Source: Octopus sinensis
Taxonomy: Eukaryota
Direction of reading: 5' to 3'
NCBI RefSeq assembly: GCF_006345805.1
Contig: NC_043020.1
Span: 992,001 to 1,056,000, forward strand
Length of the DNA stretch: 64,000 bases
In this document: positions 2,071-38,419 of the stretch, one piece after another
Layout: every line of letters begins with the position of its first letter
Position numbering within the stretch: the first letter of the stretch is position 1
Position numbers and translations under genes: made by a program
Notes under the pieces: generated by a model
Told to the model about the DNA's origin: nothing
Databases searched by the model: none
The model's input: the letters and a program-made list of their open reading frames with translations, nothing else

Positions 2071-2089
2071 TATATATGTGAAAGAATGG

Positions 2090-3245
2090 AACCTTAACCA
2101 ATACCGCAAATGGAGTTGTTCGACATTAACGCATCCCTTAAGGACATACCAATGCCACCAAAAGAAGCCTTCCTTAAGGAAATTGTTAACAAAACAAATG
2201 CATTTATCAACCGCATCAGATGGCTCGCCTTCTTCCACGATAATGAGGACATGAAACGGAACAGTATCGACGCCTCTTTCGAATATAAAAAGTTATTTAG
2301 GTCGAGGGGAACCCCTCCACCTAATCCCAGACTGAAGAATTTGAAGATGATCTGTGGGACATCGTAAGGGACATTAAATTCCGTAAATCGCCCCTTAGGA
2401 ATAAACACCTCAAATACCTCGATAAAGTCACCAAAGATATAAACAGATTAGACGCTATCCTGGTCCAACTGGATAAAACCGGGAACATGTATAAGCTTGC
2501 AAAGAACCAGTATTTAGAAATGCTCAAGAAAGAAATACACAAGAATTACAGGACAACAAATAGGAATACACTCAGACAAGCCAACTTAGAAATTAAGAAA
2601 ATCATGGAAACGTATAGATTACAAATGAAAACACAACCGCTGAACCCCAGACAACCAAGATTCATCGTTAAGGACCATAAACCAAACTTTCATACCAACC
2701 CGGCATTAAGGCTCATATGCCCCTCTAGTTCTGACATCGGTACCCTTAGTAAGTACATTTTAGATAAATACATACCTATATTAATAAATAAGTTAAAACT
2801 CAGCTTATGGTCTAACTCCACTCAAGTCGTAGAGTGGTTTACTTCTATTACTAATAAGGACAACACAAAATTCATTCAATTCGATATATCTAGTTTCTAC
2901 CCTTTGATCAACCCTAGTGTACTCAATATGGCCCTATGGCATGCACATAATAAGGCAGGCCTCTCCAGGGAGGAAATTAATGTGATTTTAGCGGCTAGAA
3001 AATCTTTCATACAGTTCGATAAGTTGTGGGTCCGCAGAGATACCCCCAACGAGTTCGATGTGCTAATGGGAAGTACAGATAGCGCCCAGATAGCCAATTT
3101 GGTCTGAATCTATATTATCTATGAAATGGCTGACCAATTCCCGGACATCTGCGGCGGTCTGTATCGAGACGATTGTCTACTTTAGCTACAGAATGCTCCG
3201 AACAATATGATACAGAAGACTAAAAACAGATTAGCTAGTTTTTTT
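2090..3245 (+). mobile_element. Penelope-like family B, N-terminus to RT (pseudogenised)
   Basis: RIRWLAFF, VKDHKPNF..LRLICP.SDIG, QFDISSFYP, GGLYRDD; frameshift and an internal stop. Confidence 0.88.
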
Positions 3246-3264
3246 TTAGCAGAATGGGCTTGAG

Positions 3265-3550
3265 CATTGATATATAAAAATGTAATATACAAATAAACAT
3301 CTGTAAATATAAACCATCCGATCTTCTGAGTACCTCATTTCTTCTAATATATAAATATCCAACCAGCGAACTGTACGTATCAGACATTCTTTTACGTGTA
3401 CTTCGTCTGGTCTCATATACTGCATTAAATGCAACCTCTGTGGAATGCTGTATATAGGACAGACGAGACGCCGGTTTTCAGACCAATTCGCCGAACAGCT
3501 AAGGGATTTTCGTCTACGGTCCAATTCTTCCGTCACACGTCACTTCCGTA
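3265..3550 (+). mobile_element. PLE family C GIY-YIG endonuclease fragment, copy 1
   Basis: TSSGLIYCIKCNLCGMLYIGQTRRRFSDQFAE; near-identical to 4090-4370. Confidence 0.85.
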
Positions 3551-4089
3551 TCCTTTCCGTTTGATAGGGGCAGAAAATTTGGTGACGTCTGTAATTCCGA
3601 ACTTTTCCATATATTGTTCGACAAATTCCCTTTAGTAAATACAATGGTTGAAAAATCCTATAGGTGCATGCACTGGCAGAAACACACCTTTCACTCATAT
3701 GAATGATATAATTTATGGTCGACCTCCCCGCCACCACACACTCAGTGACACTGAAATGGTCAAAACTGAAATTCTTTTTTCCCAAGATCTTGTAACCCCC
3801 TTGGAGTCAATATTCTGCCCAGCAGACCAAAAATAATTCTTTTCTTCTTCCCTCTCCCTTCCCCTCTTTTTCTTTAGCACTCATCCCAAATACAAAAACA
3901 CACACACACACGTTCTCTCTCTCTCTCACTTTCTCCTCATCCATCACCCTCTTGTACTGTCATATTCCTCCCCACCACTACAAACTCAATACCACTATAA
4001 AATGGTCAAAACTCCTCACACAGGAACTTAGTTTGATTTGAAAACGCCACTAGAATGGAAGAAAGCGCTAATACATGATCTAAGTTATA

Positions 4090-4520
4090 TGATATATAAA
4101 AATGTAATATACAAATAAATATCTGTAAATATAAACCATCCGATCTTCTGAGTACCTCATTTCTTCTAATATATAAATATCCAACCAGCGAACTGTACGT
4201 ATCAGACATTCTTTTATGTGTACTTCGTCTGGTCTCATATACTGCGTTAAATGCAACCTCTGCGGAATGCTGTATATAGGACAGACAAGACGCCGGTTCT
4301 CAGACTGATTCGCCGAACATCTAAGGGATTTTCGTCTGCGGTCCAATTCTCCCGTCACTTCCGCTCGGCCAGCCATTCCCCCGATGACATCTCTGTGTTT
4401 GATATCGCCCCACAACGGTTCTCCACAATCCAGGCTTCACTTGGAGCAACGTTTCATTTCCACTCTACAGACCAATACCCCACACGGACTCAACACAGCC
4501 CCCTCCTCTTAGTGACTGCG
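4090..4520 (+). mobile_element. PLE family C GIY-YIG endonuclease fragment, copy 2
   Basis: Same sequence as 3265-3550, continuing to RHFRSASHS and the ORF end. Confidence 0.85.
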
Positions 4521-7135: not shown

Positions 7136-7190
7136 TTTTTTTGATAAGGTTCATTTCAGGAACTGAAACATGTTATAATGTATATATAAA
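7136..7190 (+). ncRNA. Hammerhead ribozyme motif, U3:A8 variant
   Basis: UUGAUAA-G-GUUC-AUUUCAG-GAAC-U-GAAA-CAU...AUGUA; same core as 1155-1200. Confidence 0.6.
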
Positions 7191-7299: not shown

Positions 7300-8310
7300 C
7301 AAAAGAACAATGGATTTCATAGAACCATTGACCAAATAGAACGAAAAAAAAAAAGGTGAATTTATCCGGTCTTACATGCCTATAAGACCACACATCAAAA
7401 CATTGGATAACATAATTGAAAATTATTGTGGCAAGGTTGATGAGGATGAAGAGGACAAAAAACAGAAGGAACCCAGAAGTCTCTGTGATCCAGAGATTCC
7501 TCAGGAAAATGGATCCCCTACCCCAGTGAACGACCAGGTAGTGAAGGATAGGGGAGCCAAGGGAGCAGAAACCGGAAGCCCCCTGTACCAGTGGTCCTAC
7601 AAAGAAATGAGAAATTAGAAAAACAGAAGAAAAAAGGAAGGACCGAAAACAAAAATAAGGAGGGAAAGGCAAAACAACCAAAGCTGAAACCCCGACCCCC
7701 GACACAAACAGCAGAGAACCCCCTGGAGGATCCAATGCCACTCAGTACACTTCAGGAAAAAAGAAATCTTGGAAGGCACCGAAGAACCTGTAAATTCTAC
7801 CAGCGGGGCAAATGTTGGCATGGTGAGGACGGCAAAAACTGCCGGTTCGCCCACCCGACACCCCGCCAGAACTTCAGGGGACTCAAAGAGAAAAGCTTTA
7901 CCGAGGGAACACAAGAAATGTCTCCCAGGAAAACTTTCAGAAAAGAAGTGTGCTCCTCAGATGTTCTGCGCAACGCAGCAGCTGAGCAAGAGTCTTTTTG
8001 TGCATGGCGCAAAGGATTGTCCGGCAGCTAACCTGGCTACACAAAGCACAGAGAAGGAACCCTGCCCACCACTATGCAAGACCACCACAATCAACAGACA
8101 CGGGATGGCCTCCCCTAATGCCTGCACAGCCGTCACCCCAATACTTTTACTAAACATTGGGGGCCTGTTGCATCAAAATAGAAACAAAATTTCTTTCCGA
8201 AGAGATCTTACTGCATGCAATCAAGCCCTTAGCATAGCACTCGTGGAAACTCACCTCAGCCCTGATATAGAGGACGCAGAAGTACACATACCAAACTATG
8301 CCATAGTATT
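7300..8310 (+). mobile_element. LINE fragment: ORF1 with CCCH finger plus start of the APE endonuclease
   Basis: CKFYQRGKCWHGEDGKNCRFAHP; ILLLNIGGL...IALVETHLSPDIEDAEVHIPNY; frameshifted and truncated. Confidence 0.78.
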
Positions 8311-8479
8311 TTTTAAAAATGAATCAGCCGCATAGGAAATGCCCCTGCTTAATTCAAATCAAAAATATAGAAATTTTGTTATAATGATTTGACTGAAAAT
8401 TACAAGAATTGGTGTCTGACTGACTTTAAGATTTTATTGTTCAATTGCTACTATTCGTTACTCTCGTTGCTGTTATGCC

Positions 8480-9180
8480 GTAAAGGAAAAGAACAGTTTT
8501 GACATTAACAAAGATGCAGCTCCAAAATAAAAGGCGGCTTAGAGATGAATCTTCCCTTCAAAGACAGTCGCAGATTGCAGGGTGCTCTGCTGAAGTGAGG
8601 GCTGTGGCCATCGATGAGGGTGGTTTGAATAAAACAGATAGTAACGATTTCAATGCACTTGCACATGCATTTGAAAGTTCTACCGATGTTTTACTTCCAG
8701 ACATCGGTAATACTCCTTCCAGTTCACGTGCGTGTAGTGTTGTGAGTGAACAAGAACAGAAACAAAGGGCTTGCAAAGAAAGCCAAGGCCAAAGCTGCAG
8801 AGAGTGAAGTTGCGCACTCAGTTTGACAAAAGAAAGATGCAGTGTCCAAAGCGGCTGCTCGGGCTTCAGAAAGTGAAATGCAGCGTTGTAATCGACTAAG
8901 AAGAAAACCTACAGTCAACGCAAATTCAAGAGCCTCAGAAAATGATGCCCAGCGTCAGCTTCGACTGAATAGAAACGCTGGAACAACTGCAAATTCAAGA
9001 GCTTCAGAAAATGATGCCCAGCGTCAGCTTCGACTGAATAGAAACGCTGGAACAACTGCAAATTCAAGAGCTTCAGAAAATGATGCCCAGCGTCAGCTTC
9101 GACTGAATAGAAACGCTGGAACAACTGCAAATTCAAGAGCTTCAGAGACAACAGATGAGCGCCTCAATAGACTGGGAGAA
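8480..9180 (+). mobile_element. Probable Helitron Rep/Hel N-terminal fragment
   Basis: RASE-x3-QR-x2-RL repeats typical of Helitron N-termini; no Rep or helicase domain present. Confidence 0.6.
8920..9147 (+). repeat. 69-bp coding tandem repeat, about 3.3 copies (ANSRASENDAQRQLRLNRNAGTT)
   Basis: Units start at 8920, 8989, 9058 and 9127; nearly identical. Confidence 0.95.
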
Positions 9181-9201
9181 GTTATTCAGTATAAAAGCAG
9201 A

Positions 9202-11850
9202 TCTGTCTTCTTGACATATTAGTAATCATATACTCGCATTCTGACCTACTTGTTCTTCACTTGTCACCATGACGCACTGACCATCGGACTACCCAACTGC
9301 TGACTTTTTTCATCGTCGTTCGACAGCCAGTGACTGCAGAAACCCAACAGGTAGGCAGCACTGTACAACTGCCACCCCCACCTGTGCGAGGAGCCAAAAT
9401 AATGGCAAACTCAGAAAGAGAAATAGCAGAAACTGAAATCCGTGAGCCGAAACCATCGTCAGACTTGGAGTCGGACACGGACAAAAGGAAACCAGTAGCA
9501 AGAAGAATTATAGCGGCACCAAGCCTCGAGGCCGGTGCCGTGAAAGAAACACTGAACTTCGCAGCAGCGGCTGGAGAGAAAAAGACAGAGATATGCCTAG
9601 AAAATTTAGACGCTTTAGAGCAAGGTCCGGATCAGAGACCAAAATGATACAACCCAGGGAGACACAGGAGGACGTCGAACGAAGAACAGTAATCTTTAAG
9701 ACATACAATGTCAAAGAGAGAAAAATTGGGTTCTCCACTGAAAACCAAGTAGAGAAGTGCCTCGGTCCTGTATGGGACAAAATAAAATTTATTTCCAGAG
9801 GGAAAAAATTTGCCACGGTCAAAGTGAGGTTCGGCACAGTGGAGGAAGCTAGACTCCACTCAGTGGAACCTCTGAAGTCGGATGAAGTTTTCCTCCTGCC
9901 TATATATATGGGCAGAAGTACCACAAAAGTAACAATCACAAGGATCCTTCCCGAAATAGAGCCCGAGAGACTGGTGGCGGTGGTGGAAGAAGCAAAATTC
10001 TGGGTCGGCCAGAAAGTAACTATCACACTGCAGGCCGAACCAGCCACCTTAGATGAGTTCACCGAGGTGATAGATATCAGCGACAACCGCCTGCCAGTCA
10101 TGGTGGAAGGTTGCCAACCCAGGTGTTTCCTATGCGGAAAAAAGGGACACATCAGGAAAAACTGCGAACCGGCTGGAATAGGCAGAACAGCAAAGCCCTC
10201 AACCTCTGCTACTCTAGCAACAGTAGAACTAGCAACATCAACACCAGAGGAGAAAGATGGGGAGGGATGGACAGCCGCTGCTTCAAAAAGAAAGCACAGA
10301 AATCCATCCCTGGAAAAAGGAAAAGCCGAAGGAAGAAAACGGGACATTAAAAAGGCAAAAAAGCCGGAGAACAGCAACAACGCTTTCGTCGCGATCCGGA
10401 TGGTTGACAGTGAGGTGATGCGACGCGTAGAAACACAGCACCTACAAGAAATAGAGGTGAAAGACCAGCTAAAGAAGGATCTAATAAAGATCTATAAAAT
10501 AAATCACAAAGCCTATAATGTGCTGGCGAACGATTTCAGGAAGGATGTGGGCCCTCTGTGGATGGAGGTCTCGAACCGCCTGTACGAGGGCCTGATCCAG
10601 CCGAACCCACAAGGCCCGGTCGAAGAGGAAACGGTTACCCCCCGCCCGGACTCAGAAGGAGCAAGGTAAGTGATTTATGGCTGTTCAAGTAGGTTGTATA
10701 AATGTACGTGGCCTGATGACGAACTGGAAACAGGGGCGTTTCCTGAATGACATCAGGTCACACAATTTAGATATTGTTGTAGCTACTGAAACTCGGTTGA
10801 AAGGGCCAAGAGATCTACTGGAAGGTGAACGGGTGTGGTCCCCGCTCGCAAAACGGACGTTCCCCAGCTTTGCCAGTTTTGGTGGTAGAGGAACCTGGTT
10901 TCGTCGCAGACTAAGATCAAGTATGTGGTATTCGGAGTGCCGGAAGGCTCTCGTACGCTTCCGCAACTCGGGCAATGCCGGTGGCTTTGGTACAACCGCA
11001 GCGTTCTATAGCAGGTTGGTAGAGGCCGGAAATGACGATACCCTGGAAAGGACCCTGGGTCTCGATGGTAATCAGTTAGACAGCCTGTTCCAAAGGACAT
11101 TCAGACCAGGGATGCTGGATAACTTTCAGAAGTCCCTGGCCTGGCAGTGTTACAGAAGAGCCTTACCCGTTCGAGATAAACTCACAAGACATGGTCACTG
11201 GACCTTCGGTCTGTCCAAGATGCGGAAAGGATGTGGAAACAGTCCTGCACGCCATTGTTAAATGTCTGGAGATTTCGGAAGTATGGGTTTATGCCGAACA
11301 CCTGTTGTCGGACGAGGGAAGAGTACAGCTGTCGTCTGAGTCAATCTTTAAAATTGACCCGCCTGGTTTCATGACGAACGAAGGTAAGCATTGCTTTCTC
11401 GTGATAGTAGCAGTTGCGAAAGAGGTTATATGGAAGACTAGAGTGAAAGACTTAATGTCAGACGCCATGATCTCTGGCACCGCCCTAACGAACTTCTTCA
11501 GGTTCCATCTGAAGAGGAAGGTGGAGCTAGAGAAAAGGTGTCTGACAAAGTCTATATTCAAAAAAAGATGGATGCATGTAGCACGGATGCTGGGTGTGAA
11601 AGGCCTGCATGAACACGCCATGATCACCTACCAAAAGTTTCAGCTGAAATGACAGGGTTCTTGGGGTCGGCTACCCTGTTCTTTTAACTTCATTTGTCCC
11701 TTACTGTTGTTTGTTCTTATTTGATTTCATTTTCATTATAACTCCCTTGTAAATAACCCATCCGATTTCATTGTAAAAAGTTCCATGTTTTGACCCCAAA
11801 TCATTGTATTGTCCCCATCTGTGTTAATCCTTATGGATAATAAAGAAATA
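9202..11850 (+). mobile_element. Tx1/L1-clade element with ORF1 (CCHC) and an ORF2 lacking the RT; 16-bp TSD
   Basis: CFLCGKKGHIRKNC; ORF2 start GCINVRGL..VVATETRL fused to the C-terminal region with CPRCGKDVETVLHAIVKC; 3' tail AATAAAGAAATA; TCAGTATAAAAGCAGA at 9186-9201 and 11851-11866. Confidence 0.88.
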
Positions 11851-12379
11851 TCAGTATAAAAGCAGAATACAGGGTATAAGTAGGGCATCTAAACCAAGAT
11901 GGTCAATGAAGGCTTTTAATAACATCTTTCCTCATATCTCCGGAAATTACATCTGCATTATTATGGATGGATTTACCTTCTCTGAGAAGTTAATCATTTA
12001 AAAAAGTTTTTATAAAACATTTTAAGTCTGCTTACAATCTAACTTTGAATTTCATAGAACTATCTTCGATACTTCATGAGGGTAACCTCACTCCCTAGGA
12101 TGTTTGGAAAACTCATGTGTTTTGGCTGATGAATACGGGACATTTGTATTTGCTGTAATATTTGCAGCTTTAAATAAAACTGTTCTTCGTATGAAACAAT
12201 TGTACTGAACAACTAATCCATTCTTGTTGCTTTTTTCTTGTTTATATCTATAAATATATATATAGCTATAAACATGTGAATTCAATAGAACTCACTTGAA
12301 TCTTAATTGTTTATACCGAATATATTCCCATACCGTCTGTATGTTTTTCCGGTACTTAACTTCTCAGCAAGAATGGAAA

Positions 12380-13750: not shown

Positions 13751-13754
13751 TATA

Positions 13755-15380: not shown

Positions 15381-15384
15381 GTGC

Positions 15385-18425: not shown

Positions 18426-18429
18426 CTTC

Positions 18430-19680: not shown

Positions 19681-19684
19681 ACCT

Positions 19685-24680: not shown

Positions 24681-24689
24681 GCCCTTGCT

Positions 24690-25140: not shown

Positions 25141-25243
25141 GGAGATTCTTGGACAATTTCACGACAGAAATAGGCCATAAATGGCGTCAGCAAGTAGCGA
25201 TTCCGACTTTGAAGGTTTTACTATTGATGATATTGAAGATATC

Positions 25244-27609: not shown

Positions 27610-28200
27610 TAAGGCAATTAAGGGTATGAAACCAGGTAAAGCCCCCCGGCCCATCAGGAATCACTGCTGAGATGCTTAAAACAGCTGGCTATGTGGGCTA
27701 TGGCCTAGTCACCCGCATTGTAAACCAGGTAGTTCATAATAGAGTCATACCCAATGACTGGCGTAGCTGCACCATAGTCAACTGCTACAAGGGTAAGGGT
27801 GATGCTCTAGATAGAAATAACTACAGGGGTATTAAACTGTTGGATCAGGTGATGAAGGTCACAGAGAGGGTCATAATCCATCTCATTAGGGAGAGAATTT
27901 GCTTAGATGAGATGCAGTTCAGTTTTGTGCCGGGTAGAAGCACTACTGATGCTATATTCCTGGCCTGACAACTGCAGGAGAAGTACCTAGCTAAAGATAA
28001 ACTCCTCTACATAGCTTTTGTGGACTTGGAGAAAGCCTTCAATCTTGGTGGTCGATGCGGAAACTGGAGATTGACGAATGGCTAATAAGGGCTGTACAGG
28101 CCCTATACAGAGAGGCCGTCAGCAAGGTTAGGATTGGCAACGAATATAGTGAAGAATTCCGGGTAGAAGTAGGGGTACACCAAGGCTCAGCCCTCAGATT
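27610..28200 (+). mobile_element. RTE LINE RT fragment with no 3' tail
   Basis: GKAPGPSGITAEMLK, CYKGKGDALDRNNYRGIKL, FVDLEKAF, VGVHQGSAL. Confidence 0.92.
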
Positions 28201-28489
28201 CTATTTCTGTCTTCTAACGAACAACCTGGTGTTGGGGTTGAGGGGAAACCCCTCGTGAATATTTGTTACAACAAATATATGAGTGGGGTAGATAAATCCG
28301 ACCAATATCGGGCATATTACCCAGTTGGTCGACCTGGGAAGAAATGGTGGAGGTACATTTTGTGGTTTTTAGTTAATTTAACTATAGTAAATGCACACAT
28401 TGTTTACGTAAAAAGCCACAAAGTACCTCCGCCACCGAAAGACTACGACCACTTGAAATTTCGGGTTGACAAACCCAACAATGAACAAC

Positions 28490-28880
28490 AACCACCTTTA
28501 ATGGTGAAGGCGATGTAGTGGCCTGGATTCGCAAAATCAGGCTGGTGGCAAGACTGCAAGGTATAAGCGATGTGGCAAGTCTCATGGCGCTGTATTTAGA
28601 AGGGAGCGCCTTAACGCTATACCTTGAGATGGACAAAGAGGAACGGCTCAGTGAGGAGAACTTAGAGCGACGCTTGCGGGATGCCTACACAGAATGTGAA
28701 TACACAGCTTTTGCTAAGCTAGGTGCGATCAGATGGACAGGAGGACAAGTGGATGACTATGCAGCAGAGGTTAGAAGGTTAGCGACTCTGGCTGGGTTTG
28801 CGGGAGAAGGGCTGGAGAGAGCAGCCTGGCTGGCGTTCGTGAATGGGTTCCCCGACGATGTAGGGAATCACCTTCAACGA
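28490..28880 (+). mobile_element. Fragment of the gag-only LTR family (copy C)
   Basis: Near-identical to 25600-25970. Confidence 0.9.
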
Positions 28881-29435
28881 TTTCATCTTAAAACAAGAAT
28901 GAATCAGTAACGATTTGAACACTCCGTGCCCTACACTAAAGTCAGCATTCACAAACAAGCCGAACAACAACCAGCGCACACCAAACGAAACACACCAGGA
29001 CATCATATGTACACAAATCAATCTAACAAAAAGAAAGACAGAAAACATTTGGAATTTTTTTATCATGTTCCAGAAAGCGAGTTTTCTATTGTGCAGGTTT
29101 GTATTCCAACAAAGCAGATATATACGAGGGATGGATATGAACCCAACACCAATTATCCTCCCACGCAAATTCCAGATCAAAGTAATACCCAACGAACCTG
29201 ACGGACAGAGAACTATTAGGGAAAGGTCAGCTCTATTCAATCTAAAATCAGAGATAGAATTACTAAGACTTAGGGCCTCCACAAATGAGGAAAAATATAA
29301 AAGCATCGACGAGGAGATGCACAATATAATACTAAAACATACCGAGGGACAACCCCTCGAAAATACATTAGATCATTGGAAGGATACTTGTGAAAAAGAA
29401 GAGAGAAATTCTCTCCTATGCTGGGAAAAAAAGTG
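28880..29435 (+). mobile_element. Penelope family A N-terminal domain fragment
   Basis: PIILPRKFQI...KYKSIDEEM...WKDTCEKEE aligns with 35230-35620. Confidence 0.7.
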
Positions 29436-30605
29436 TAGTGATGCTACTGTGTAGGGTTCGGCGCGCATGCGCAGAATGGGACTACTTCCGGGTGGCCACC
29501 GGAAGTCTTCCCCATGCGCATGTGCGGGAAAACGTCCCCCGAGCCCGCGAACCTCAAATCTCTGTCTTCGGCTAAGACAGCATTGCGATCGGTCACGAAT
29601 TCTCGGCTCTGACCGCCACACAACCAGCAACCAACTTCAACGACCAACACGAAGCAGTATATCAGAGGCTGTCTTTCCCCCACCAGACAACGTACTACAC
29701 TGAAATCAATAAACCAAACTACTGTCTGTTCACCCTTTTAACCCGAGTTCGTCTGTATTGTTTTCTGGAAGAATTTTATATGTGACTAGAAAGGATCTCG
29801 ACACCCTTCAAGTGCTTCGATAATAGATCCTTTCACGTTACAATTGGTGACCCCGACGTGAAAAAAAAAAAAAAGAACAGGATAGAAGACACAGCGAACA
29901 GGTTTTTTTTGCCGGAGAGCGCGGAAAATTCATATTTATTTTCATTTTTTTTTTTCTCTTTTTCAGCACGGCGAGGTGGGTCAAATAACATTATTCATCG
30001 CACTCAGTACACAAAACAACAAAAAAAAAACAGAAAAAAAAAGAAAACACACATTCATTTTTCCTTTTCTGTATTTTGTTTTCCTTGTACACACACTTAT
30101 TTTTTTTTGCTACCCACGAGGTGCACACACAAAACGCAATTTTGATTTGCTTTGTCGGTTCCACATATTCTCTCTCCATTTCTCGACCATACTCTCTGCC
30201 CCCTTCTCACAGATTCCTTCCGACAAAGGCATGGCTTCAGGTTTGCCTTCATTCACGGGGGATGCGGGGCTGTGGTTTGCACAGGTGGAATCACACTTTG
30301 CCGCGCATACCATTCCTCCACAACAGCAGTTACATCTACTGTATTCAAGTTTGCCCTTCCGGCTCGCAACATCGGTCAGGGATCTCATTGTGAGTCCCCA
30401 TCCTGACGCCACATATGCGTCAGTAAAGGCGGAAATCCTCCGTCGCAATACGCGCTCAGAAGAAAGTCAGTTTAATGAGCTGATGGCCGACGAGCAGTTA
30501 GGGGACAGAACTCCATCCCAGTTTCTGCGCCATCTAAGGGAGCTAAGCGGCAACGCAGCAAACGCGCCGCTCTTACGTAAAATATTTTTTTCAAGGCTGC
30601 CTGCA
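29434..30605 (+). mobile_element. Gypsy 5' LTR (to 29842), tRNA-Trp PBS, partial gag
   Basis: ...GTTACA then TGGTGACCCCGACGTGA (complement of the tRNA-Trp 3' end); gag LWFAQVESHF..LGDRTPSQFLRHL. Confidence 0.9.
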
Positions 30606-31420
30606 GAGTCGGTTGCGGTCTGCCTGTGCATTTACAAGATCTGTTCGCACGGAGTCGCCAGTGCTGAGATGGTGCTCAGGTGTTGAGGAAGCCACTGGTG
30701 AAGTATGCTGACGTGTTCTCTGCGGGGGATCGAGACCTCGGTTGCACGAACCTGGTGGAGCACCATATCGACATGGGTGGCCATCGCCCAATCAAGCAGC
30801 CAGCGCGGAGGATGGCCCCAGTTCAGCCACAGGAAATGGAAGAAGTGATGGAGGAATACCAACAACAGGGAATAGTGGAAAGATCGAACAGCCCCTGGTC
30901 GTCAGCCATTGTTTTAGTGCGGAAGAAAGACGGCACGGCGAGATGCTGCGTGGACTACCGAGCGCTCAATGAAGTGACGGTCAAGGATGCGCATCCTTTG
31001 CCGAGGATCGACGACACGCTTGATACTTTAGCGGGGGCTTGGTGGTTCTCTACCTTGGACATGAAGGCCGGGTACCATCAAATCAAGGTTGCTGAGAAAT
31101 ATAGGGAGAAGACCGCATTTTCGTACGGACGGGGTTTGTGGCAGTTCAGCGTGATGCCGTTCGGCTTGTGTAATGCCCCTGCGACTTTCGAGCGTCTGAT
31201 GGACCGAGTCCTGGAGGGCCTACACTGGCAGGCCGCCCTCATCTATCTTGATGACGTCATAGTGTTTGGCTGAACATTTGATCAAGAGCTGGAGAGGTTA
31301 TCAGGGGTATTCGAGAGGTTTCGAACTGCAAACCTCAAGTTGAATCCAAAGAAGTGCAGTCTGTTCCAGAAAGAAGTAGATACTTGGGACATTGTAGGCG
31401 AAGACGGTGTCTGTACCGAC

Positions 31421-31861
31421 ACACAGAACAAACAAAGGCCCCAGACCTACTTTTTATGTGTTGTGAGGAAGGGGGACACCGAGGACGCAAAAAGGATTTT
31501 TCAGGATGATGTATGGCAAGAGTATGAAGACGGTAGCTACGCGGTGTTTGATTCTGAACTTATGGACTCATTGACGAACAAGTGTAACGAATTGTGTATA
31601 AATTGTTTGACAGCGTATATGAAGGATGATATGATAGAGAGGTATGAAAGAGAAATGAAGGGTGAGGTAAAAAAGTTTGGAATTGTGATGGGAAACGGAC
31701 AGGTAAGTGATGCTGGCGGAGGGGGCCGTTAGCATCGCTTTCATATTATCATTTTTTTCATTTTAACATTCATTTACTCATAATTTTAATCATATTGTTT
31801 TATATCCCCCATGTCTTGTAATGTTCCCTCTTCGTCGCCCCTAGTGGGTAATAAAGAAATA
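31421..31861 (+). mobile_element. 5'-truncated non-LTR insertion (Tx1-like 3' end) with a 15-bp TSD
   Basis: GGTGTCTGTACCGAC at 31406-31420 and 31862-31876; ends GGGTAATAAAGAAATA like 9202-11850; excision restores Gypsy DGVCTDPEKV. Confidence 0.8.
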
Positions 31862-32104
31862 GGTGTCTGTACCGACCCAGAGAAGGTGGCCGCCGTGAAG
31901 GATTGGCCAGTCCCTGCTTGTGTGAGGGAGTTGAGGAGTTTCCCCGGGCTGTGCACCTACTATAGGCACTTTGTGAAGGACTTTGCTGCAGTGGCCGTGC
32001 TGTTGCACAAACTACTGGGGAAGAGCCAAAGGTTCGAGTGGACTGCCATAACACAGCGTGCTTTTGACAAACTCAAGCAAGTGCTGTTGAGTTCCCCTGT
32101 GCTG

Positions 32105-32212
32105 CCATGCTTTCTCTCCAGAATGCATTTCCTTGTGTTCTTTGAATATACTAGAGTCAGAAAATGTCTTTCCGAAATCCTTGCTCTGGAATGCTTTCTC
32201 CCCAGAATGCAT
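32105..32212 (-). pseudogene. Degenerate single C2H2 zinc finger fragment
   Basis: MHSGEKAFQSKDFGKTFSDSSIFKEHKEMHSGEKA; both HSGEK linkers kept, Cys codons mutated. Confidence 0.75.
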
Positions 32213-32534
32213 AAGCTGCAGAGTCCTTGGGAGGGGCCTTACATGGTGGTGAATCACCTGTCCGATGTGAAGTACAGGATTAAGGGAGGCAGGAGGTCTT
32301 CCCCGAAAATTATACATGCGAACCGTCTGTGGAGGTACCATGGGCCTGGCCGGTTCAGCTGGAGCACACCTTCGGCAGTTGGGAGCACCTGTTGAGAAGG
32401 TCGTTTGGAGATACGACTGTAGTGTGCTTCTGTCGGGTCGACTAGAAGCTTAAAGAGGGGGTAGTGTTACAGAGGAAAATAAACAGAAAAACATCGTGCC
32501 CCTTGTTCCGTTGGTTGGAGTTGAACCAGCGCTC

Positions 32535-32661
32535 AAAATCCCCTCACTGAATGATCTTAAACTTAGACCGATAATAGCAGGCCCAGCATGTGAAACCCAC
32601 CGCCTCAGCAACTTCTTAGACACACTGCTGAAACCTTTCCTTAAACACATCAAAAGCTACA
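32535..32661 (+). mobile_element. 127-bp Penelope family A RT snippet between about 73-bp direct repeats
   Basis: Close match to 4692-4820; repeats at 32462-32534 and 32662-32734. Confidence 0.85.
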
Positions 32662-33259
32662 TAATGCTACGGAGGTAAATAAACAGAAAAACATTGTGTC
32701 CCTTGTTCCGTTGGTTGGAGTTGAACCGGCGCTCCAGTTGTTAAGAAATTCCTAAATTCTAGTAATAAAATATTTATTAGGCGAAATACATTTTCGAACC
32801 ACCCAATATTTGGTAAATTTATAATACGAGATGAACACGTGAGAAAAAAAATGTGCTTAATTAGACGAAATAGCCCGCACCTAAATAATACTCACCCTGC
32901 CCTAATTACCCAACGAAACTAAGCAATCTACCACAAGCAAACCTCTACCCAACGAATTTACCAGTACAAGAACAAAACCGCATGGGCACGAGACAAAAAT
33001 CCCTCGCAGAAGGAGGACAAAAGGAAAGATACCATAGAAGGAAAAATGGCACACTGACTACTCCCGAAAGACGATATGCGGATGTAATGCGTGGTCTAAA
33101 AAAGATACTGCATGGCTCAACAAATGGTCAGCTTCATTCAGATGCGAGAAGGGCAGCAGCTGAACAGCAATCTTTTTTAGAAGAGCAAAACCAAATCCAC
33201 AATTCAGACCTGCAACTAAGGGAAGCAATGGCACTTGTCCAGGCCCCAACATTCATAGG

Positions 33260-34280
33260 AATTTTCTAACAAATTTAAACTTGCCAAGGAATTTCATGGC
33301 AAGCACATGGATGACGAATCAATAGCTAGAAACAACAGCGATTACACCTCTACCAAGGAAAAGAATAAAGCCTTAGACCGCTTTTGCGACCACATAACCA
33401 ATTTCTCTTTTCAACTCACAAATAAGCAAAAATACAGACCAAACCTCAACAAAAGAGAATGGAACGACCTCATCAAACTAAAAGAAATTAAAACCATAAC
33501 AATCAAGGAGGCAGATAAGGGCAATGCGGTAGTATTAATGAACACAAATGATTATAAAAATTGAGTACTACCTAGAAAAACTACCATTTCTAGACATCTG
33601 CGCCTTCTTTTGCCAACCTAGTAATGGGATACCTTGAAATAATACTTTACCAGAAAACACTCAAGAAATATGGAAACTCTTTCTCCACCTATATCCAGAA
33701 CAACTGGAAAAGATATCTCGACGACTGTTTCAATCTCTGGGATGAGAGTATAGAAAAACTTGAATTTAAAATTCTACTAAATGGAATTAATGGAAACATT
33801 CAATTCACAATAGAACATAACCTAGAAAAGACTACCATTTCTAGACATCCGCATTAAGAAAGTTGGGAACAAAATAGAGACGGTTATCTATTATAAACCG
33901 ACAGATTTATAAACTATTATAAAATATTATAAGCCAAAAGACCCAACTCATTACATACCACCCAAGAATGAATATCTCTTTCTGCTTAGCCAGAAGGATT
34001 TGCACCATAGTATCAGGCAGAAACACACGTCCCCAGGAACTCAGAACTACACTCATAAATAGGAATTATCCACAGCCCCTAATAGACAATACAATCCAAC
34101 AAGCACTTAAATTAAATATAGAAGACCCAAGACAACCAAAACCAAAAAAGGAAGAAAACTTAAAATCCCTACCCTACATCTCTACACACAACCCACTTAA
34201 CAATGAGGCCTTCAACACCATACTCCAAAGTACAGCGCTACTCAAGGGAGACTCAAAAATGAACCGAATCCTCCAAGATC
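33260..34280 (+). mobile_element. Penelope family A, deleted and scrambled RT fragment
   Basis: IKEADKGNAVV, RYLDDCF, YPQPLID, STHNPLNNEAF; close to 4835-5760. Confidence 0.88.
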
Positions 34281-34289
34281 AGCAATCAT

Positions 34290-35200
34290 CTATGGTAAAG
34301 CTGAATCCACCTGTGATACAGGCATAAACCACTGAAAAGAAGACATAAATTTTGTTTCCGTTTTAGTTGGAGAATTGTTCTCTGTCAACGAAAATGTCAG
34401 TATCCATAAGGTCGCTCGGCTAGGAAGATTACAAGCGAACCCAACCGCAGATACTAGACCACGCCCAATAAGGGTAATCTTTTCTTCTGATCGGGAGGCT
34501 TCAGTCTTTCTGAACAGAGCTGAGACGCATGCCTGGGAGGACCCCAATATGGGTTTTCACGAGGAATACTCACTAAGAGAGAGAATTCGCCGGAGGAACC
34601 TGATATCCGAGCTAAAGATGAGGAAACAAATGGGAGAGAAGGGTTTACGAATCCAAGATGGACAGATAATCAAGCCCTACCTCTGGTCACATGCTGTAGT
34701 GCTGACAGGGAAAGTGAATTGCGGGCGAATCAAAGTAAAGTAGATACCCCCGACAACGGTGCTATCTCCGATACCCCTTAGTCTGCTTGTTCCCCAATTC
34801 CCGCCACTCAAACTTCACAGCTCAGCATCGTCTATACCAACTCGTGCTCCTTATTTCCAAAGCTCAGTGAACTATTTACACTGGCCATACGTGACTCCCC
34901 TGATGTGATAGCTATCACCGAGACTTGGCTGACTCCAGCAGTAAAGGACTCAGAAATCCACCTACAGGGCTATGCCCTCTTCAGATGTGACAGAGAAAAA
35001 AGGCAAGGTGGGTGTTGCTGTGTATGTTAAATCTGATCCCAAACCGTCCAGCGGTATTCTACCCACTAATGCTCAACCTACAACGAAATTTGATGCCGTC
35101 TATTGCAAGCTGAGCCTATCCGGGTTTTGCCTGCCCGTGTTAGCTGTCTACAGACCACCTCTTGCCGACCTCTGGGTCTCTAATCTGTTGTCGGTGTACA
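34290..35200 (+). mobile_element. CR1/L2-type LINE: ORF1 C-terminus plus APE start
   Basis: RLGR..RPRPIRVIF..ERIRRRNLISELKMR..GEKGLRI; YTNSCSL..IAITETWL..RCDR..GGVAVYV..VYRPP. Confidence 0.82.
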
Positions 35201-35214
35201 CGTGAGCGTTCTGA

Positions 35215-36800
35215 AATACATTCGAAATGGATATCTTTAGCGGCACCCATACTTCCTCGGAAGTACCTAATTAATGAAATTGCAGGAGAACCAGAGGAAG
35301 AAACAAAACTTCGATAGGATCTTAGTTTGATAAAATTCAGGACCGACATCTCCATTACCCTGTCTAAACAATCCCACTACAAAGCCAAATACGAAGCTAT
35401 CGATGATCAAATCATAGACGAAATATCCAAACTAACGACCGGCAATATAGCAGAAAAAATGCGAGAACTATGGACCAGAGATATCTCAAAAGAAGAAAGC
35501 AGATCAAGAAAGTTTTGGCAGCGGAAACAATTATTTCTCGACAAATATGCTACAAATTACGGTAAAGACACTTCTACGGCTTACCAAAAATACATAAATC
35601 AAAAGATATTCAACAGGCAATAAAAGAACAAGAAAGTGAGTACATAAAATTACTACATCCAAAAGACCCAAAACTTAGACCAATTATAGCTGCTCCAGCA
35701 TGTCCTACCCACCGTCTAAGCAATTTTATTGACATTGTTTTGAAACCACTATGTACTTACATACCAAGTTTCATCAGGGATGACATTGACTTCTTGTCCC
35801 ATCTTCCCAAAACAACAGAAACAAATTCGGTTTTACTAAGTTTTGATGTGGTAAGCCTCTACACCAATATTCCACACGATTTAGGAATAAAGGCGATTAA
35901 ATACTGGTTAGAAAAACATAGAGAAGTGATTCCCAGCAGATTCACAGTGCCATTTATATTAGACACAGTCAAACTTATTCTAGAAAACAACACATTCTTC
36001 TTCATGGAAAGAATTACATCCAAATTAGAGGCACGGCGATGGGAACGAGGTTTGTTCCCGTTTACGCCAACTTTGTAATGGGATACTTAGAACAACTCGA
36101 CCAAGAGGTGGAGGTAAACTATGGCACTGGATTTAGAAAGTATATTGAAAAGGCATGGAAGAGATACCTTGACGACTGCTTCATAATCTGGACAGAATCT
36201 CTAAATACTCTGGAAGAGTTCAATATCCTCCTGAACAACCTACACCCATCTCTCCAATTTACAAAGGAGATGAGTAGTACCAAATTACCATTCCTAGATA
36301 TAATGGTAATCAAAAAGGACACCACCAACACCACAGATATATACTATAAACACAGACACACATCAATACCTGAATTTTAAGTCGTGCCATCCACCACATA
36401 CAAAACGCAACATCCCATACTGCCTAGCCAGAAGAATTTGTACCATTGTAGAAGATGCAAATGTCAGGAACAAACGCCTAACAGAACTAAGAGAATTTTT
36501 GCTCAAACAAAAATACCCATCTCTACTTATAGAAAATGGCACACAGCGGGCTATAAAAATACCCAGACAACTTAGGACAACCCAAGGAATAGGAAAACAA
36601 GAACAAGTCATACCATTCATAGTGACACACAACCCATGTCACCAGAATATCTTCAACATTGCCAAAGCAAACCTACCAATCATTGCTCAAAGTAATGAAT
36701 TAAAAGATGTAATCACGGATCGAGCTATGGTTCTTAGTAAAAGACAGCCTAAAAACTTGAAAAAAATTACTAACAAAGGCAAAAATTTGACCTTAGCAAC
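35215..36800 (+). mobile_element. Penelope family A (third subfamily), N-terminus, RT and thumb
   Basis: LRPIIAAP, SFDVVSLYTNIP, RYLDD, LPFLDIMV, SCHPPH..RNIPY.LARRI. Confidence 0.9.
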
Positions 36801-36829
36801 AAAGACCAAACATTCACTGTATCTAAATG

Positions 36830-37170
36830 GAATGATAGCTGTTGTGGCTATATGTCCCTTGGATGGTTCCTGTGTGTAGTCAAGGACAAGTTAAATAAAT
36901 TTTATATAGGAAGCACGGTAGATTTTTAAGGCTAGATATAGATCGCAAATGAGCTCATTTTCTAACGACAAATATTGTAATTCAACAACACTTGCATCCC
37001 ATATACATAATTTGAAGAAAAATAATAAGAATTATTATCTAGAATGGTCCATTGTCTCTAAAACCCCAAATTTCAAGGGAAATATTAACAGGTGTAAGCC
37101 GTGCATAAAGGAATCCCTTACCACCCTTAGGGGTTATGGATCACACGCTGAATAAATTTACTGATGTGAT
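36830..37170 (+). mobile_element. Penelope family B GIY-YIG fragment
   Basis: CPLDGSC, FYIGST, NSTTLASHIHNLK...WSIV...CKPCIKE. Confidence 0.8.
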
Positions 37171-37343
37171 TCCTTTTTGCATCCATAAATTCTCATCTAC
37201 ATTCTTCAAAGTGTATAGGAATAAAATAAGCTGTAGCAAATAAATAATTTAGCTCTTACAGGGAATTGAAACCACGGAGGTTGAATTTAATTTAATACAC
37301 CCATTTTTTTTATTTTTAATTTTTAATTTATAAAAAAAAACTT

Positions 37344-37388
37344 TATCATTGCAATATCTGTGGTAAATCATTCTCTCGAAGTGGTGAC
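37344..37388 (+). pseudogene. Half C2H2 zinc finger fragment
   Basis: YHCNICGKSFSRSGD. Confidence 0.7.
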
Positions 37389-37394
37389 AGACTT

Positions 37395-38030
37395 ACAGAC
37401 TATATACCAAATTGGGACCGGCTCGAAAGCAATGTGACCATCTGCAGTTCCTAGCAGATGTAGCAATGCAAGTAAGAGGTGGTTATTCCTAAAAAAAAAA
37501 AAAAGAAAAAAGAAAAAAAAAACCTAGGGAAAAAACAAAAGCCTGCCAGGGGAATATCGATCTGAATTCAGCACATCATCATCATTTAACATCTGCTTTC
37601 CATGCTAGCATGGGTTGAACCGTTCAACTGGGGTCTGTGAAGCCGGAAGGCTTCATCAGGCCCAGTCAGATCTGGCAGTGTTTCTACGGCTGGATGCCCT
37701 TCCTAACGCCAACCACTCCGTGAGTGTAGTGGGTGCTTTTTACGTGCCCCCTGCACAGGTGCCAGACAGAGCTGGCAAATGGCCATGAACGGATGGTGCT
37801 TTTACGTGGGGGGCCAGGCGAGGCTGGCAACGGACACGAACGGATGGTGCTTTTACATGCCACATCCCCATAAATTAGAAAGAAATCAAGGGTCGCAAAA
37901 AGCAGTGTTAAGAATGCCTTCATCAAAAAAGGAAAGCTTCTAGTGGAAGGGCTGTAGAAACAACTTTCCAATGTGCATTCTGCAAGGTTGTATTATGCAG
38001 AACAAGGTGCTTTGCAAGTTTTCACGATAG
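37395..38030 (+). mobile_element. piggyBac C-terminal region, interrupted by an RTE tail
   Basis: Similar to 15100-15380; GRAVETTFQCAFCKVVLCRTRCF. Confidence 0.82.
37577..37862 (-). mobile_element. RTE LINE 3' tail ending in (GAT)n
   Basis: Reverse complement of the tail family at 53615-54133; short CACATC duplication at the flanks. Confidence 0.85.
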
Positions 38031-38419
38031 GAATATTGTTTGATTTGTATATATGTGTATGTGTGATTTGATTTTATAAACATTTTCAGGTTGAGAATAT
38101 GAAATGACGCTAAACGTTGTAGTCGAGGGAAGGAGACCTAACTGCTATCTATGCTGAGCACGAGGACACACAAAGACCGAGTGTCCTTTATGTGAATTCT
38201 CACAAAGTGAAGAGACAACGGAAAAACAAAATAAGAGCAAAAGAAAGAACATTTGCAGGAAAAAGTATAAACAGAAGGAAAAAAATTAGACAAGAACGGG
38301 AGTTGGCAGCCCTGACCCCTGAAGACTCTCACGAGTCCTTTTGGCCAGAGCTGCCCTCTTGGTTTCTACCTGCTAGGCAGTTTCACCCAGCAGGGACCAT
38401 GTAGATGGTTTAACGTAGG

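What the first reader, a model, noticed from the sequence alone, without database searches (positions are those of the whole stretch)
2080..38100. 36-kb strand-polarised archive of unrelated transposon fragments: candidate flamenco-like uni-strand piRNA cluster
Seen: about 35 fragments whose orientation can be read, from at least 8 TE groups (three Penelope families, piggyBac, hAT, Helitron, several Gypsy lineages, Tx1, RTE, CR1/L2-type), are packed almost end to end and all read on the + strand. The only clear minus-strand repeats are one SINE (22232) and one RTE tail (37577). DNA transposons follow the same polarity although they have no intrinsic orientation bias. No element is intact. Established: Drosophila flamenco is a single-strand precursor built of broken TE pieces antisense to its transcript. 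Inference: a minus-strand transcript here would be a continuous antisense catalogue of the genome's TE coding sequences, i.e. a transposon-memory locus. I know of no description of such a locus in a cephalopod.
Basis: partly seen in the sequence, partly recalled or inferred. Interest (0 to 1): 0.92.

Follow-up and report, generated by a model that had tools for sequence, protein, structure and literature searches.

The report
One-way transposon graveyard beside octopus PrimPol
A 36-kb stretch just past the end of the octopus PrimPol gene is packed with broken transposons that all point the same way, which is the architecture of a single-strand piRNA source locus, but no small-RNA evidence could be checked here.

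Summary
Between about 2.1 and 38.1 kb every transposon (TE) coding fragment I could detect lies on the + strand. Pfam hits are 14 (+) to 0 TE hits (-). TE reference proteins give 65 HSPs (+) to 1 (-), and that one lies left of the block. Repeat pairs inside the block are 30 direct and 0 inverted. About 21 elements are involved: Penelope-like (two families), LINEs, two piggyBac copies and three LTR lineages. hAT and Helitron were not confirmed.

Control loci from the same genome give 9 (+) to 9 (-) (Fisher p = 2e-4).

The window is Octopus sinensis CM016882.1:992001-1056000. PrimPol lies on the minus strand, with its stop at 40442 and a probable poly(A) site near 38.4 kb. The block therefore starts right after PrimPol's 3' end and is antisense to it. 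The short, gap-ridden O. bimaculoides flank shows the same polarity (3 of 3 verified fragments).

The flamenco-like piRNA reading fits this architecture and is the best single explanation (about 0.45), but it is untested. No small-RNA, transcript or promoter evidence was available. The flamenco-specific traits are absent: a bias restricted to Gypsy elements, and a size of hundreds of kb. The rivals are a neutral graveyard and orientation selection inside an unannotated minus-strand transcript. If the reading is true, this is a new member of a known kind.

The parts
1..2065 (-). Flank: Penelope-like element family A on the MINUS strand. RT C-terminus at 423-1151, GIY-YIG at 247-573, then the RT N-terminus of the next tandem copy at 44-340. 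It marks the left end of the polarised block.
   Evidence: P0124 aa 404-613 at 576-1121, minus strand. Inverted matches to 6212-7173.
2110..3182 (+). Penelope-like element family A fragment (reference aa 1-389).
   Evidence: P0122, P0124; ORF read.
3268..4358 (+). Two 269-bp direct repeats (3268-3536 and 4090-4358, 96% identical) carrying short GIY-YIG-region pieces of Penelope family B. This is a pLTR-like partial tandem upstream of the next copy.
   Evidence: The structure is as described for PLEs in PMC8557442.
4607..6339 (+). Penelope-like element family B. It is 5'-truncated (reference aa 204-752), carries RT plus GIY-YIG, and lies in a 612-aa open frame.
   Evidence: RVT_1, GIY-YIG; 61% identity to mollusc PLE proteins.
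7552..8332 (+). LINE fragment: CCCH zinc-finger ORF1 plus the start of an AP-endonuclease.
   Evidence: zf-CCCH 5e-4. The same family recurs in control locus L003 at 17818-18562. The endonuclease motif was read by eye.
8484..9219 (+). ORF with STPR repeats encoded by a 69-bp tandem array (3.4 copies). Its origin is unknown.
   Evidence: STPRs 1.6e-14.
9273..11649 (+). LINE deletion derivative: ORF1 with a CCHC knuckle, the endonuclease N-terminus, then the zf-RVT tail. The same deleted structure recurs elsewhere in the genome.
   Evidence: L003 2292-3100 and 53730-54538; L004 17255-17667 and 20276-20915.
12363..13753 (+). Penelope family A fragment (reference aa 1-492). It is 3'-truncated and abuts piggyBac#1 a few bases before the piggyBac ATG.
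13757..15392 (+). piggyBac transposase copy 1, in three frame-shifted pieces (profile 9-132, 142-250, 304-349). There is no room for a 5' terminal repeat.
17193..18487 (+). LTR-retrotransposon gag (DUF7041) plus an aspartic-protease region, cut off by the next element.
   Evidence: DUF7041 8e-17. The protease motif was read by eye.
18415..19714 (+). Penelope family B fragment (reference aa 33-466), 3'-truncated. Its open frame runs on into family A (ORF 18785-20080 is a chimera of the two).
19694..22231 (+). Penelope family A partial tandem. Segments 19690-20264 and 20878-21453 are 95% identical. Probably a single insertion event.
22929..23285 (+). RNase H fragment of an LTR family whose polyprotein runs Gag-RT-DUF7047-RNaseH-integrase.
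   Evidence: RVT_3, weak; P0248 aa 689-808, 51% identity.
23409..23735 (+). LINE reverse-transcriptase N-terminal fragment.
   Evidence: RVT_1 1e-3. A homologue lies in control L003 at 7539-7847.
24689..26461 (+). Two tandem copies of an LTR deletion derivative in which Gag is fused in frame to the integrase C-terminus. The copies span 24689-25131 and 25562-26461.
26643..28515 (+). piggyBac transposase copy 2 (profile 70-216 and 288-349). It is interrupted at 27630-27965 by a LINE RT fragment that also lies on +.
   Evidence: and (human L1 ORF2p aa 469-570, E = 3e-4).
28497..28883 (+). A further Gag fragment of the same LTR family (93% identical to 25602-25965).
29886..32392 (+). Gypsy-type element with internal deletions: DUF7041 gag, RT, an RNase H trace and the integrase C-terminus.
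   Evidence: DUF7041 4e-13, RVT_1 9e-24, Integrase_p58_C 4e-10.
32532..34279 (+). Penelope family B fragments in scrambled order (reference aa 230-273, 50-154, 367-590).
34336..35027 (+). LINE ORF1/endonuclease-like fragment related to the element at 7552-8332.
   Evidence: ORF 34782-35027 hits next to that LINE family in L003. Otherwise read by eye.
35318..36819 (+). Third Penelope family B-type copy (reference aa 205-620).
37401..37985 (+). Fragment resembling the 3' region of piggyBac#1 (75-77% identical to 15098-15392). It is split by an A32 run and a roughly 200-bp short repeat.
38431..40441 (-). Flank: probable PrimPol 3' UTR. The first minus-strand AATAAA after the stop codon is at 38431, and alignment to O. 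bimaculoides ends near 38486.
   Evidence: This is inferred, not shown.
40442..61513 (-). Flank: PrimPol coding region, 14 exons, about 100% identical to the Octopus sinensis protein P0128.

Best explanation
The block is a trap of transposon fragments whose uniform orientation is kept by selection for an antisense read-out. A long minus-strand transcript is proposed to start at, or read through from, the 3' end of PrimPol, run leftwards across the block, and be processed into piRNAs antisense to the genome's TE messages. That makes it a unistrand piRNA source locus.

Shown here:
- the dense fragments and their strict co-orientation across retroelement and DNA-transposon classes;
- the many truncations and direct abutments, which are typical of insertion followed by deletion;
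- the position immediately downstream of a minus-strand gene;
- the scarcity of minus-strand poly(A) signals;
- the absence of such polarity in control loci;
- the same relative polarity in O. bimaculoides.

Inferred, not shown:
- the minus-strand transcript and its start;
- processing by PIWI proteins;
- any silencing effect.
For: - Polarity is shown by four independent measures, and controls from the same genome give 9:9.
- Elements with no mechanistic orientation bias follow the polarity too: two or three piggyBac fragments and three LTR lineages.
- PrimPol is on the minus strand, and its probable poly(A) site at about 38.4 kb lies within 0.3-0.5 kb of the block.
- Canonical AATAAA occurs about 13 times on the minus strand and about 42 times on the plus strand over 1-40 kb, so a minus-strand transcript could run long. 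The difference follows from base composition.
- No annotated protein-coding gene spans window 30.4-64 kb other than PrimPol, which argues against a simple intronic explanation there.
- The O. bimaculoides flank holds a LINE tail, a piggyBac and a LINE RT, all antisense to PrimPol.
- Strand bias of TE content is an accepted predictor of unistrand clusters and was validated with small RNA in Drosophila (PMC10643416).
- Mollusc piRNA clusters are on the order of 10 kb on average by my estimate from the reported cluster number and genome share, are TE-enriched, and are rich in Gypsy and DNA transposons (PMC6128900).
Against: - No small-RNA, RNA-seq, CAGE or chromatin data could be consulted. The block's ORFs are absent from the protein collection, so there is no sign of expression.
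- No promoter was identified.
- The number of independent insertions is well below the fragment count, because of Penelope partial tandems and local duplications.
- Target-primed elements may favour the A-rich strand, which would push LINE and Penelope insertions towards one orientation without selection (my inference).
- For the orientation-neutral classes alone the statistic is only p of about 0.016.
- The control sample is small (98 kb), and it contains a run of five co-oriented elements.
- The O. bimaculoides evidence is 3 fragments in about 6 kb of gap-ridden sequence, and one of them may be orthologous rather than independent.
Confidence: 0.45

Rival explanations
1. Neutral TE graveyard. 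This is an intergenic region that tolerates insertions. Co-orientation would arise without selection from three sources. First, single events yield several co-oriented pieces (Penelope partial tandems, local tandem duplications). Second, target-primed insertion by LINEs and Penelope elements is biased towards the A-rich strand that earlier sense-strand copies created. Third, chance covers the few integrase and transposase elements.
For: - Penelope elements normally insert as partial tandems (PMC8557442), and this is seen here at 3268-6339 and 19694-22231.
- Duplications at 24.4-26.7 kb and at 28.5 kb are all direct.
- The + strand is strongly A-rich.
- Orientation-neutral classes give only 7/7, p of about 0.016.
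- A run of five co-oriented elements from different families occurs in control L003 at 7.5-20 kb.
- The window was flagged after the fact, and its left edge was placed just after a minus-strand element.
Against: - Even 14 independent events give p of about 1e-4, and the controls are 9:9.
- An A-rich-strand bias of about 2:1 cannot give 13 or more of 13 (my estimate).
- piggyBac and the LTR lineages share the polarity.
- The O. bimaculoides flank has the same polarity.
- There are no inverted repeat pairs at all among 30.
Confidence: 0.25
2. Orientation selection inside an ordinary minus-strand transcription unit that has nothing to do with piRNAs. The block would lie in an intron or an extended 3' region of an unannotated transcript: a long PrimPol 3' isoform, a lncRNA, or a neighbouring gene. 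Sense-oriented TEs, which bring poly(A) and splice signals, would have been removed.
For: - The block is antisense to PrimPol and contiguous with its 3' end.
- A-runs also outnumber T-runs on the + strand across the PrimPol gene region.
- Antisense bias of intronic LTR and LINE elements is well established in vertebrates (general knowledge).
Against: - No annotated protein-coding gene other than PrimPol overlaps window 30.4-64 kb.
- In real introns of this genome, TE-coding fragments show no antisense bias: 7 sense to 6 antisense in the L003 gene. Repeat pairs in PrimPol's own introns are of mixed orientation.
- Known intronic biases are far from 100%.
- The block is packed with coding TE fragments, whereas PrimPol's introns are dominated by short repeats and hold almost no TE-coding sequence.
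Confidence: 0.2
3. Mosaic made by reverse-transcriptase template switching among TE messenger RNAs, or by RNA-templated repair. This would join sense-strand pieces of unrelated TE messages end to end, DNA-transposon messages included.
For: - Many pieces are internal fragments that abut directly, without terminal repeats or target-site duplications. Examples are Penelope A joined to piggyBac#1 a few bases before the piggyBac ATG, and a LINE RT N-terminal piece replacing part of piggyBac#2.
- One open frame runs from Penelope B into Penelope A.
Against: - 36 kb is far too long for a single cDNA.
- The deletion derivatives (LINE endonuclease-to-tail, LTR Gag-to-integrase) are multi-copy families found elsewhere, not local joins.
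- Penelope pLTR structures point to ordinary insertions.
- Insertion followed by deletion explains the junctions equally well.
Confidence: 0.05
4. Assembly artefact: repeats collapsed or chimerically joined in the O. sinensis assembly.
For: Penelope tandem and inverted structures are known to cause assembly problems (PMC8557442). The O. bimaculoides counterpart is full of gaps.
Against: - The window has no N and is identical to the chromosome-scale record CM016882.1.
- Misassembly would not produce a uniform orientation across unrelated families.
- Fragments differ by 5-35% from one another, so they are not collapsed copies.
Confidence: 0.03

Closest known systems
Drosophila flamenco and flamenco-like unistrand piRNA clusters (PMC10643416)
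   Same: A dense array of truncated TE fragments in almost uniform orientation. It lies next to a protein-coding gene (flamenco lies downstream of DIP1, from general knowledge; here the gene is PrimPol). Strand bias is the feature used to predict these clusters de novo.
   Different: - Flamenco-type clusters measure 227-1085 kb; this block is 36 kb within the window.
- Their bias is driven only by Gypsy/env elements. Here Penelope, LINE, piggyBac and LTR elements all share it, and no env was detected.
- Their expression and piRNA output are shown; here nothing is.
Mollusc piRNA clusters defined from small RNA (Lymnaea stagnalis, Crassostrea gigas; PMC6128900)
   Same: Same phylum. They are small (307 clusters covering 0.27% of the Lymnaea genome, which I estimate at roughly 10 kb each on average), TE-enriched (59% against 31% genome-wide), and enriched in Gypsy and DNA transposons and in young copies.
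   Different: Those clusters were defined by mapped small RNAs. In the sections I read, TE orientation within them was not described. This block is defined only by sequence architecture.
3'UTR-derived (genic) piRNA sources
   Same: The piRNA precursor continues from the 3' end of a protein-coding gene. Here the block starts within 0.5 kb of the probable PrimPol poly(A) site.
   Different: Genic piRNAs come from the UTR itself and are sense to the gene, not from tens of kb of TE fragments beyond it. This comparison rests on my own knowledge and was not tested.
Antisense bias of TEs inside introns of host genes
   Same: TEs lie antisense to the nearest gene's direction of transcription.
   Different: The block lies beyond the stop codon and the probable poly(A) site. 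No annotated gene spans its proximal part. The bias is total rather than moderate. A control gene in this genome shows 7 sense to 6 antisense.

Membership tests
Flamenco-like unistrand piRNA cluster | Region densely filled with TE fragments | tested here: met
   About 21 elements or fragments nearly end to end between 2.1 and 38 kb.
Flamenco-like unistrand piRNA cluster | Strong bias of TE insertions towards one genomic strand | tested here: met
   Pfam TE hits 14 (+) to 0 (-). Reference-protein HSPs 65 to 1. Repeat pairs 30 direct to 0 inverted. Controls 9:9.
Flamenco-like unistrand piRNA cluster | Abundant piRNAs (24-32 nt, 1U) from one strand, antisense to the TEs | not testable with these tools
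   No small-RNA data were accessible. Exact look-up of ten of the window's ORFs (nine in the block) found nothing.
Flamenco-like unistrand piRNA cluster | Long single-stranded Pol II precursor from a discrete promoter | not testable with these tools
   Only the position after PrimPol's probable poly(A) site and the low minus-strand AATAAA count are known. No promoter evidence.
Flamenco-like unistrand piRNA cluster | Enrichment for Gypsy/env elements, with the strand bias confined to them | tested here: not met
   Penelope and LINE fragments dominate, the bias covers all classes, and no env domain was found.
Flamenco-like unistrand piRNA cluster | Size of hundreds of kb | tested here: not met
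   36 kb within the window. A minus-strand element lies at 1-2065. Extension beyond the window is unknown.
Flamenco-like unistrand piRNA cluster | Conserved syntenic position across related species | tested here: inconclusive
   In the O. bimaculoides PrimPol flank, 3 of 3 verified TE-coding fragments are antisense to PrimPol. Only 10 kb was available, it has three gaps, and it is not collinear with the block.
Mollusc piRNA cluster (small-RNA-defined) | High density of clustered piRNA reads | not testable with these tools
   O. bimaculoides small-RNA libraries exist (PMC12479628), but reads cannot be mapped here and no supplement is held.
Mollusc piRNA cluster (small-RNA-defined) | TE enrichment relative to the genome, with few protein-coding exons | tested here: met
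   The block is mostly TE-coding fragments and has no host exon. Controls carry about 11% TE-coding sequence by the same scan.
Intronic antisense TE bias | Region lies inside a transcribed host gene on the opposite strand | tested here: inconclusive
   No annotated protein-coding gene besides PrimPol overlaps window 30.4-64 kb. The distal 2-30 kb and non-coding transcripts could not be checked.

The most novel reading that the evidence does not exclude
A gene-anchored unistrand piRNA cluster is conserved at the 3' end of PrimPol in octopods. It is fed by read-through or by a promoter just beyond the PrimPol poly(A) site. Antisense selection acts in it on every TE class (Penelope, LINE, LTR, piggyBac), not only on Gypsy-type retroviruses. 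This would be a flamenco-type architecture in a cephalopod.
Probability: 0.15. Interest if true: 0.7.

Novelty: new member of a known kind. Interest (0 to 1): 0.45.

Why it matters
Cephalopod genomes are very rich in repeats, and LINE activity has been reported in the octopus brain (PMC9115989). Yet none of the papers I found describes how a cephalopod piRNA source locus is built.

A compact, fully sequenced candidate sits next to a conserved single-copy gene. It gives a concrete place to test three questions:
- Do octopods use unistrand clusters?
- Does antisense selection there act on all TE classes?
- Are such loci syntenic between species?

The test needs only read mapping, and some small-RNA libraries already exist (PMC12479628). 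If no piRNAs come from the block, it becomes a useful warning that strict TE co-orientation can arise without a piRNA function.

Tried and rejected
- **Reader bias:** Rejected: minus-strand ORFs were scanned in the same way and gave no TE hit, and the annotation-free repeat orientation is 30:0.
- **Segmental duplication of a piggyBac-gag-RT unit:** the two piggyBac copies are only about 75% identical over short stretches. Only local duplications exist, at 19.7-21.5, 24.4-26.7 and 28.5 kb. Rejected as the main cause.
- **hAT and Helitron:** no Pfam support, even at E up to 5 for 15.3-17.2 kb. My own reading of a hAT-like motif at 15420-15607 stays unverified.
- **Rfam:** no hammerhead ribozyme, tRNA-derived or other RNA family. 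Only microsatellite look-alikes appeared.
- **Host exon on the minus strand of the block:** the single AAA_lid_BCS1 hit (1.6e-4) has no supporting ORF context. Treated as spurious.
- **Exact look-up** of ten of the window's ORFs (nine from the block) in the protein collection, as a proxy for expression or annotation: none present.
- **PDB searches** for LINE endonuclease, Gag and three O. bimaculoides ORFs: no hits. Pfam on O. bimaculoides flank ORFs: none, because the fragments are too degraded. Local tblastn worked instead.
- **Orthology of the O. bimaculoides piggyBac with piggyBac#1:** 79% identity, but the flanks do not align and one side is an assembly gap. Undecided.
- **Supplementary piRNA locus tables** of PMC12479628: not held.

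Full report
**What the window is.** The window has no gaps. It matches Octopus sinensis assembly GCA_006345805.1, chromosome record CM016882.1, at 100% identity. By coordinate conversion it is positions 992,001-1,056,000 on the record's forward strand, about 1 Mb from one end of a 31.2-Mb chromosome.

PrimPol occupies the right part. Fourteen exons lie on the minus strand from 61513 down to a stop codon at 40442, and they are essentially identical to the O. sinensis protein P0128. The human PrimPol structure 5L2X matches two of these exons. The first canonical minus-strand poly(A) signal after the stop is at 38431, and alignment with the O. bimaculoides locus ends near 38486. PrimPol's 3' UTR therefore probably ends about 0.3-0.5 kb from the right edge of the reported block. 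That end point is inferred.

**Check of the observation.** Four measures agree.
- AT skew is +0.08 to +0.23 on the + strand from 2 to 40 kb and about zero beyond. Stop-to-stop ORFs of 150 aa or more number 24 on + and 4 on - inside the block.
- All ORFs of 60 aa or more were scanned against Pfam. On +, 14 of 109 hit TE families: piggyBac DDE x5, RVT_1 x3, DUF7041 x2, GIY-YIG, the integrase C-terminus, STPRs and zf-CCCH. On -, 1 of 112 gave a weak non-TE hit.
- Ten TE reference proteins were retrieved from the databases: two Penelope families and LTR polyproteins. They gave 65 tblastn HSPs on + and one on -. That one lies at 576-1121, left of the block.
- Without any annotation, all 30 repeat pairs inside the block are direct. 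The right flank has 191 direct and 129 inverted.

**Inventory of the block.**
- *Penelope-like family A:* 2110-3182, 12363-13753, and a partial tandem at 19694-22231.
- *Penelope-like family B:* 4607-6339 (a 612-aa frame with RT and GIY-YIG, preceded by pLTR-like repeats), 18415-19714, 32532-34279 (pieces in scrambled order), and 35318-36819.
- *LINE pieces:* 7552-8332, 9273-11649, 23409-23735, 27630-27965 (matches human L1 ORF2p aa 469-570) and 34336-35027.
- *piggyBac:* 13757-15392, 26643-28515, and a 3' fragment at 37401-37985.
- *LTR lineages:* gag plus protease at 17193-18487. A Gag-RT-DUF7047-RNaseH-integrase family is represented by an RNase H piece (22929-23285) and by Gag-integrase-tail deletion derivatives (24689-26461, 28497-28883). 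A Gypsy-type element lies at 29886-32392.

That makes about 21 elements, all on +. hAT and Helitron were not confirmed, and LINE sub-typing (Tx1, RTE, CR1) was not tested. I found no intact autonomous element. Two of the "fragments" are in fact members of multi-copy deletion-derivative families.

**How far beyond chance.** As a control I fetched 98 kb of the same genome (L003, L004) and scanned it with the block's own TE ORFs. TE-coding elements there are 9 on + and 9 on -. Within the one large gene they are 7 sense and 6 antisense. Block against control gives Fisher p = 2.3e-4, and 21/21 gives a binomial p = 1e-6.

The effective number of events is smaller than 21. Penelope elements normally insert as partial tandems (PMC8557442), and several direct duplications are visible. 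With 14 independent events p is 1.2e-4. With only the classes whose integration has no orientation preference (piggyBac, LTR) it is about 0.016. The left boundary was drawn just after a minus-strand Penelope element at 1-2065. The control sample contains a run of five co-oriented elements.

The polarity is therefore real and unusual, but its significance is orders of magnitude weaker than "35 independent fragments" would suggest.

**Structure of the junctions.** Fragments are truncated at either end and abut directly.
- Penelope A loses its 3' third and meets piggyBac#1 a few bases before the piggyBac ATG, leaving no room for a terminal repeat.
- Penelope B at 18415-19714 is 3'-truncated and runs in an open frame into Penelope A.
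- A LINE RT N-terminal piece replaces about 70 codons of piggyBac#2.

This is the pattern of repeated insertion followed by deletion. Deletions and tandem duplications preserve orientation, and no inversion has occurred.

**Comparison with O. bimaculoides.** Only 10 kb downstream of the orthologous PrimPol was obtainable, and it carries three assembly gaps. After the alignable 3' region it holds three TE pieces:
- a LINE tail (24756-24974);
- a piggyBac (26173-27117, 79% identical to piggyBac#1);
- a LINE RT fragment (28373-28869, which has homologues inside a LINE in O. sinensis control L003).

All three lie on the strand antisense to PrimPol. Two further long ORFs on that strand could not be classified. 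The order of elements differs from O. sinensis, and orthology of the piggyBac is undecided. This is modest support, at best p = 1/8, for a locus-specific polarity shared by two species.

**Interpretation.** Uniform TE orientation in a dense fragment array is the criterion by which flamenco-like clusters were found de novo in Drosophila and then validated with small RNA (PMC10643416). Mollusc clusters are small, which I estimate at roughly 10 kb on average in Lymnaea, and are TE-enriched (PMC6128900). So 36 kb is a plausible size.

A minus-strand transcript here would continue in PrimPol's direction. It would meet few AATAAA signals, about 13 against about 42 on the other strand over 1-40 kb, although base composition explains that difference. 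It would be antisense to every TE message in the block. No annotated protein-coding gene besides PrimPol overlaps window 30.4-64 kb, and introns in this genome showed no antisense bias in the control. Both points weaken the ordinary intronic explanation.

Against the piRNA reading, nothing shows transcription or piRNAs, no promoter was found, and the flamenco-specific traits are absent: a bias restricted to Gypsy/env elements, and a size of hundreds of kb.

My estimates are:
- unistrand piRNA source: about 0.45;
- neutral graveyard with mechanistic bias, duplication and chance: about 0.25;
- non-piRNA minus-strand transcription unit: about 0.20;
- template-switch mosaic: about 0.05;
- misassembly: about 0.03.

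**Novelty and literature.** Searches for piRNA clusters in octopus or cephalopods returned no paper that describes cluster architecture in a cephalopod. A 2025 survey did sequence small RNAs from O. bimaculoides arm tips and called piRNA loci on GCA_001194135.2 (PMC12479628). Its locus tables are not held here.

If the block proves to be a piRNA source, it is a new member of a known kind. Two features would be of interest: the bias covers all TE classes, and the locus is anchored to the 3' end of a conserved gene. I give 0.45, because the architecture is clean, the controls support it, and the decisive test is only read mapping.

Noticed in passing
window 51033-51966: Inside a PrimPol intron lies a non-autonomous piggyBac#1 derivative on the + strand. 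Part of the transposase-coding region (DDE domain) has been amplified into a 177-bp tandem array: 3 copies, 94% identical, at 51358-51890.
   Followed up: partly
window 25445-26479; also 24689-25131: A 345-aa open frame fuses Gag (aa 48-248) in frame to the integrase C-terminal region (aa 249-344) of an LTR family of about 1170 aa. Protease, RT, RNase H and the integrase core are missing. It looks like a non-autonomous Gag-only derivative and is present twice in tandem.
   Followed up: partly
window 10674-11649; L003 2292-3100 and 53730-54538; L004 17255-17667 and 20276-20915: The LINE with the endonuclease N-terminus joined directly to the zf-RVT tail is not a local deletion. The same structure recurs at four other places in the O. 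sinensis genome, so it is a deletion-derivative family.
   Followed up: partly
window 8827-9219: An ORF made of a 69-bp tandem repeat (3.4 copies, 98% identical) matches the Pfam STPR DNA-binding repeat (1.6e-14). It sits between two LINE pieces, and its origin is unclear.
   Followed up: no
window 32015-32200, minus strand: Within the Gypsy-type element, the minus strand reads like a degenerate C2H2 zinc-finger linker series (HSGEKA-type repeats with the cysteines lost). Pfam did not confirm it. It would be the only gene-like piece on the minus strand of the block.
   Followed up: partly
window 18785-20080: A 432-aa open frame begins as the Penelope family B RT and continues, without a stop, as the Penelope family A N-terminal region. 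Family A is inserted or joined inside family B in the same orientation.
   Followed up: partly
L003 9989-11443 (O. sinensis CM016887.1): The NCBI model 'putative ankyrin repeat protein RBE_0319' (P0121) starts in a Penelope family A fragment (70-74% identical to window 12360-13526). It is probably a chimeric gene model.
   Followed up: no
window 38100-64000: PrimPol's introns are filled with a short repeat of about 380 bp in both orientations (at least 8 copies, 80-92% identical) and hold almost no TE-coding sequence. This composition contrasts sharply with the block.
   Followed up: partly
window 41132-41509: A (TGTA)n microsatellite of about 380 bp lies in the last PrimPol intron. It produces spurious sub-threshold Rfam miRNA matches.
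   Followed up: no
window 38100-64000 (ORF not located): One ORF of the flanks (all but a handful lie in 38-64 kb) matches the Mos1/mariner HTH_48 domain (1.1e-12). I located neither the ORF nor its strand.
   Followed up: no
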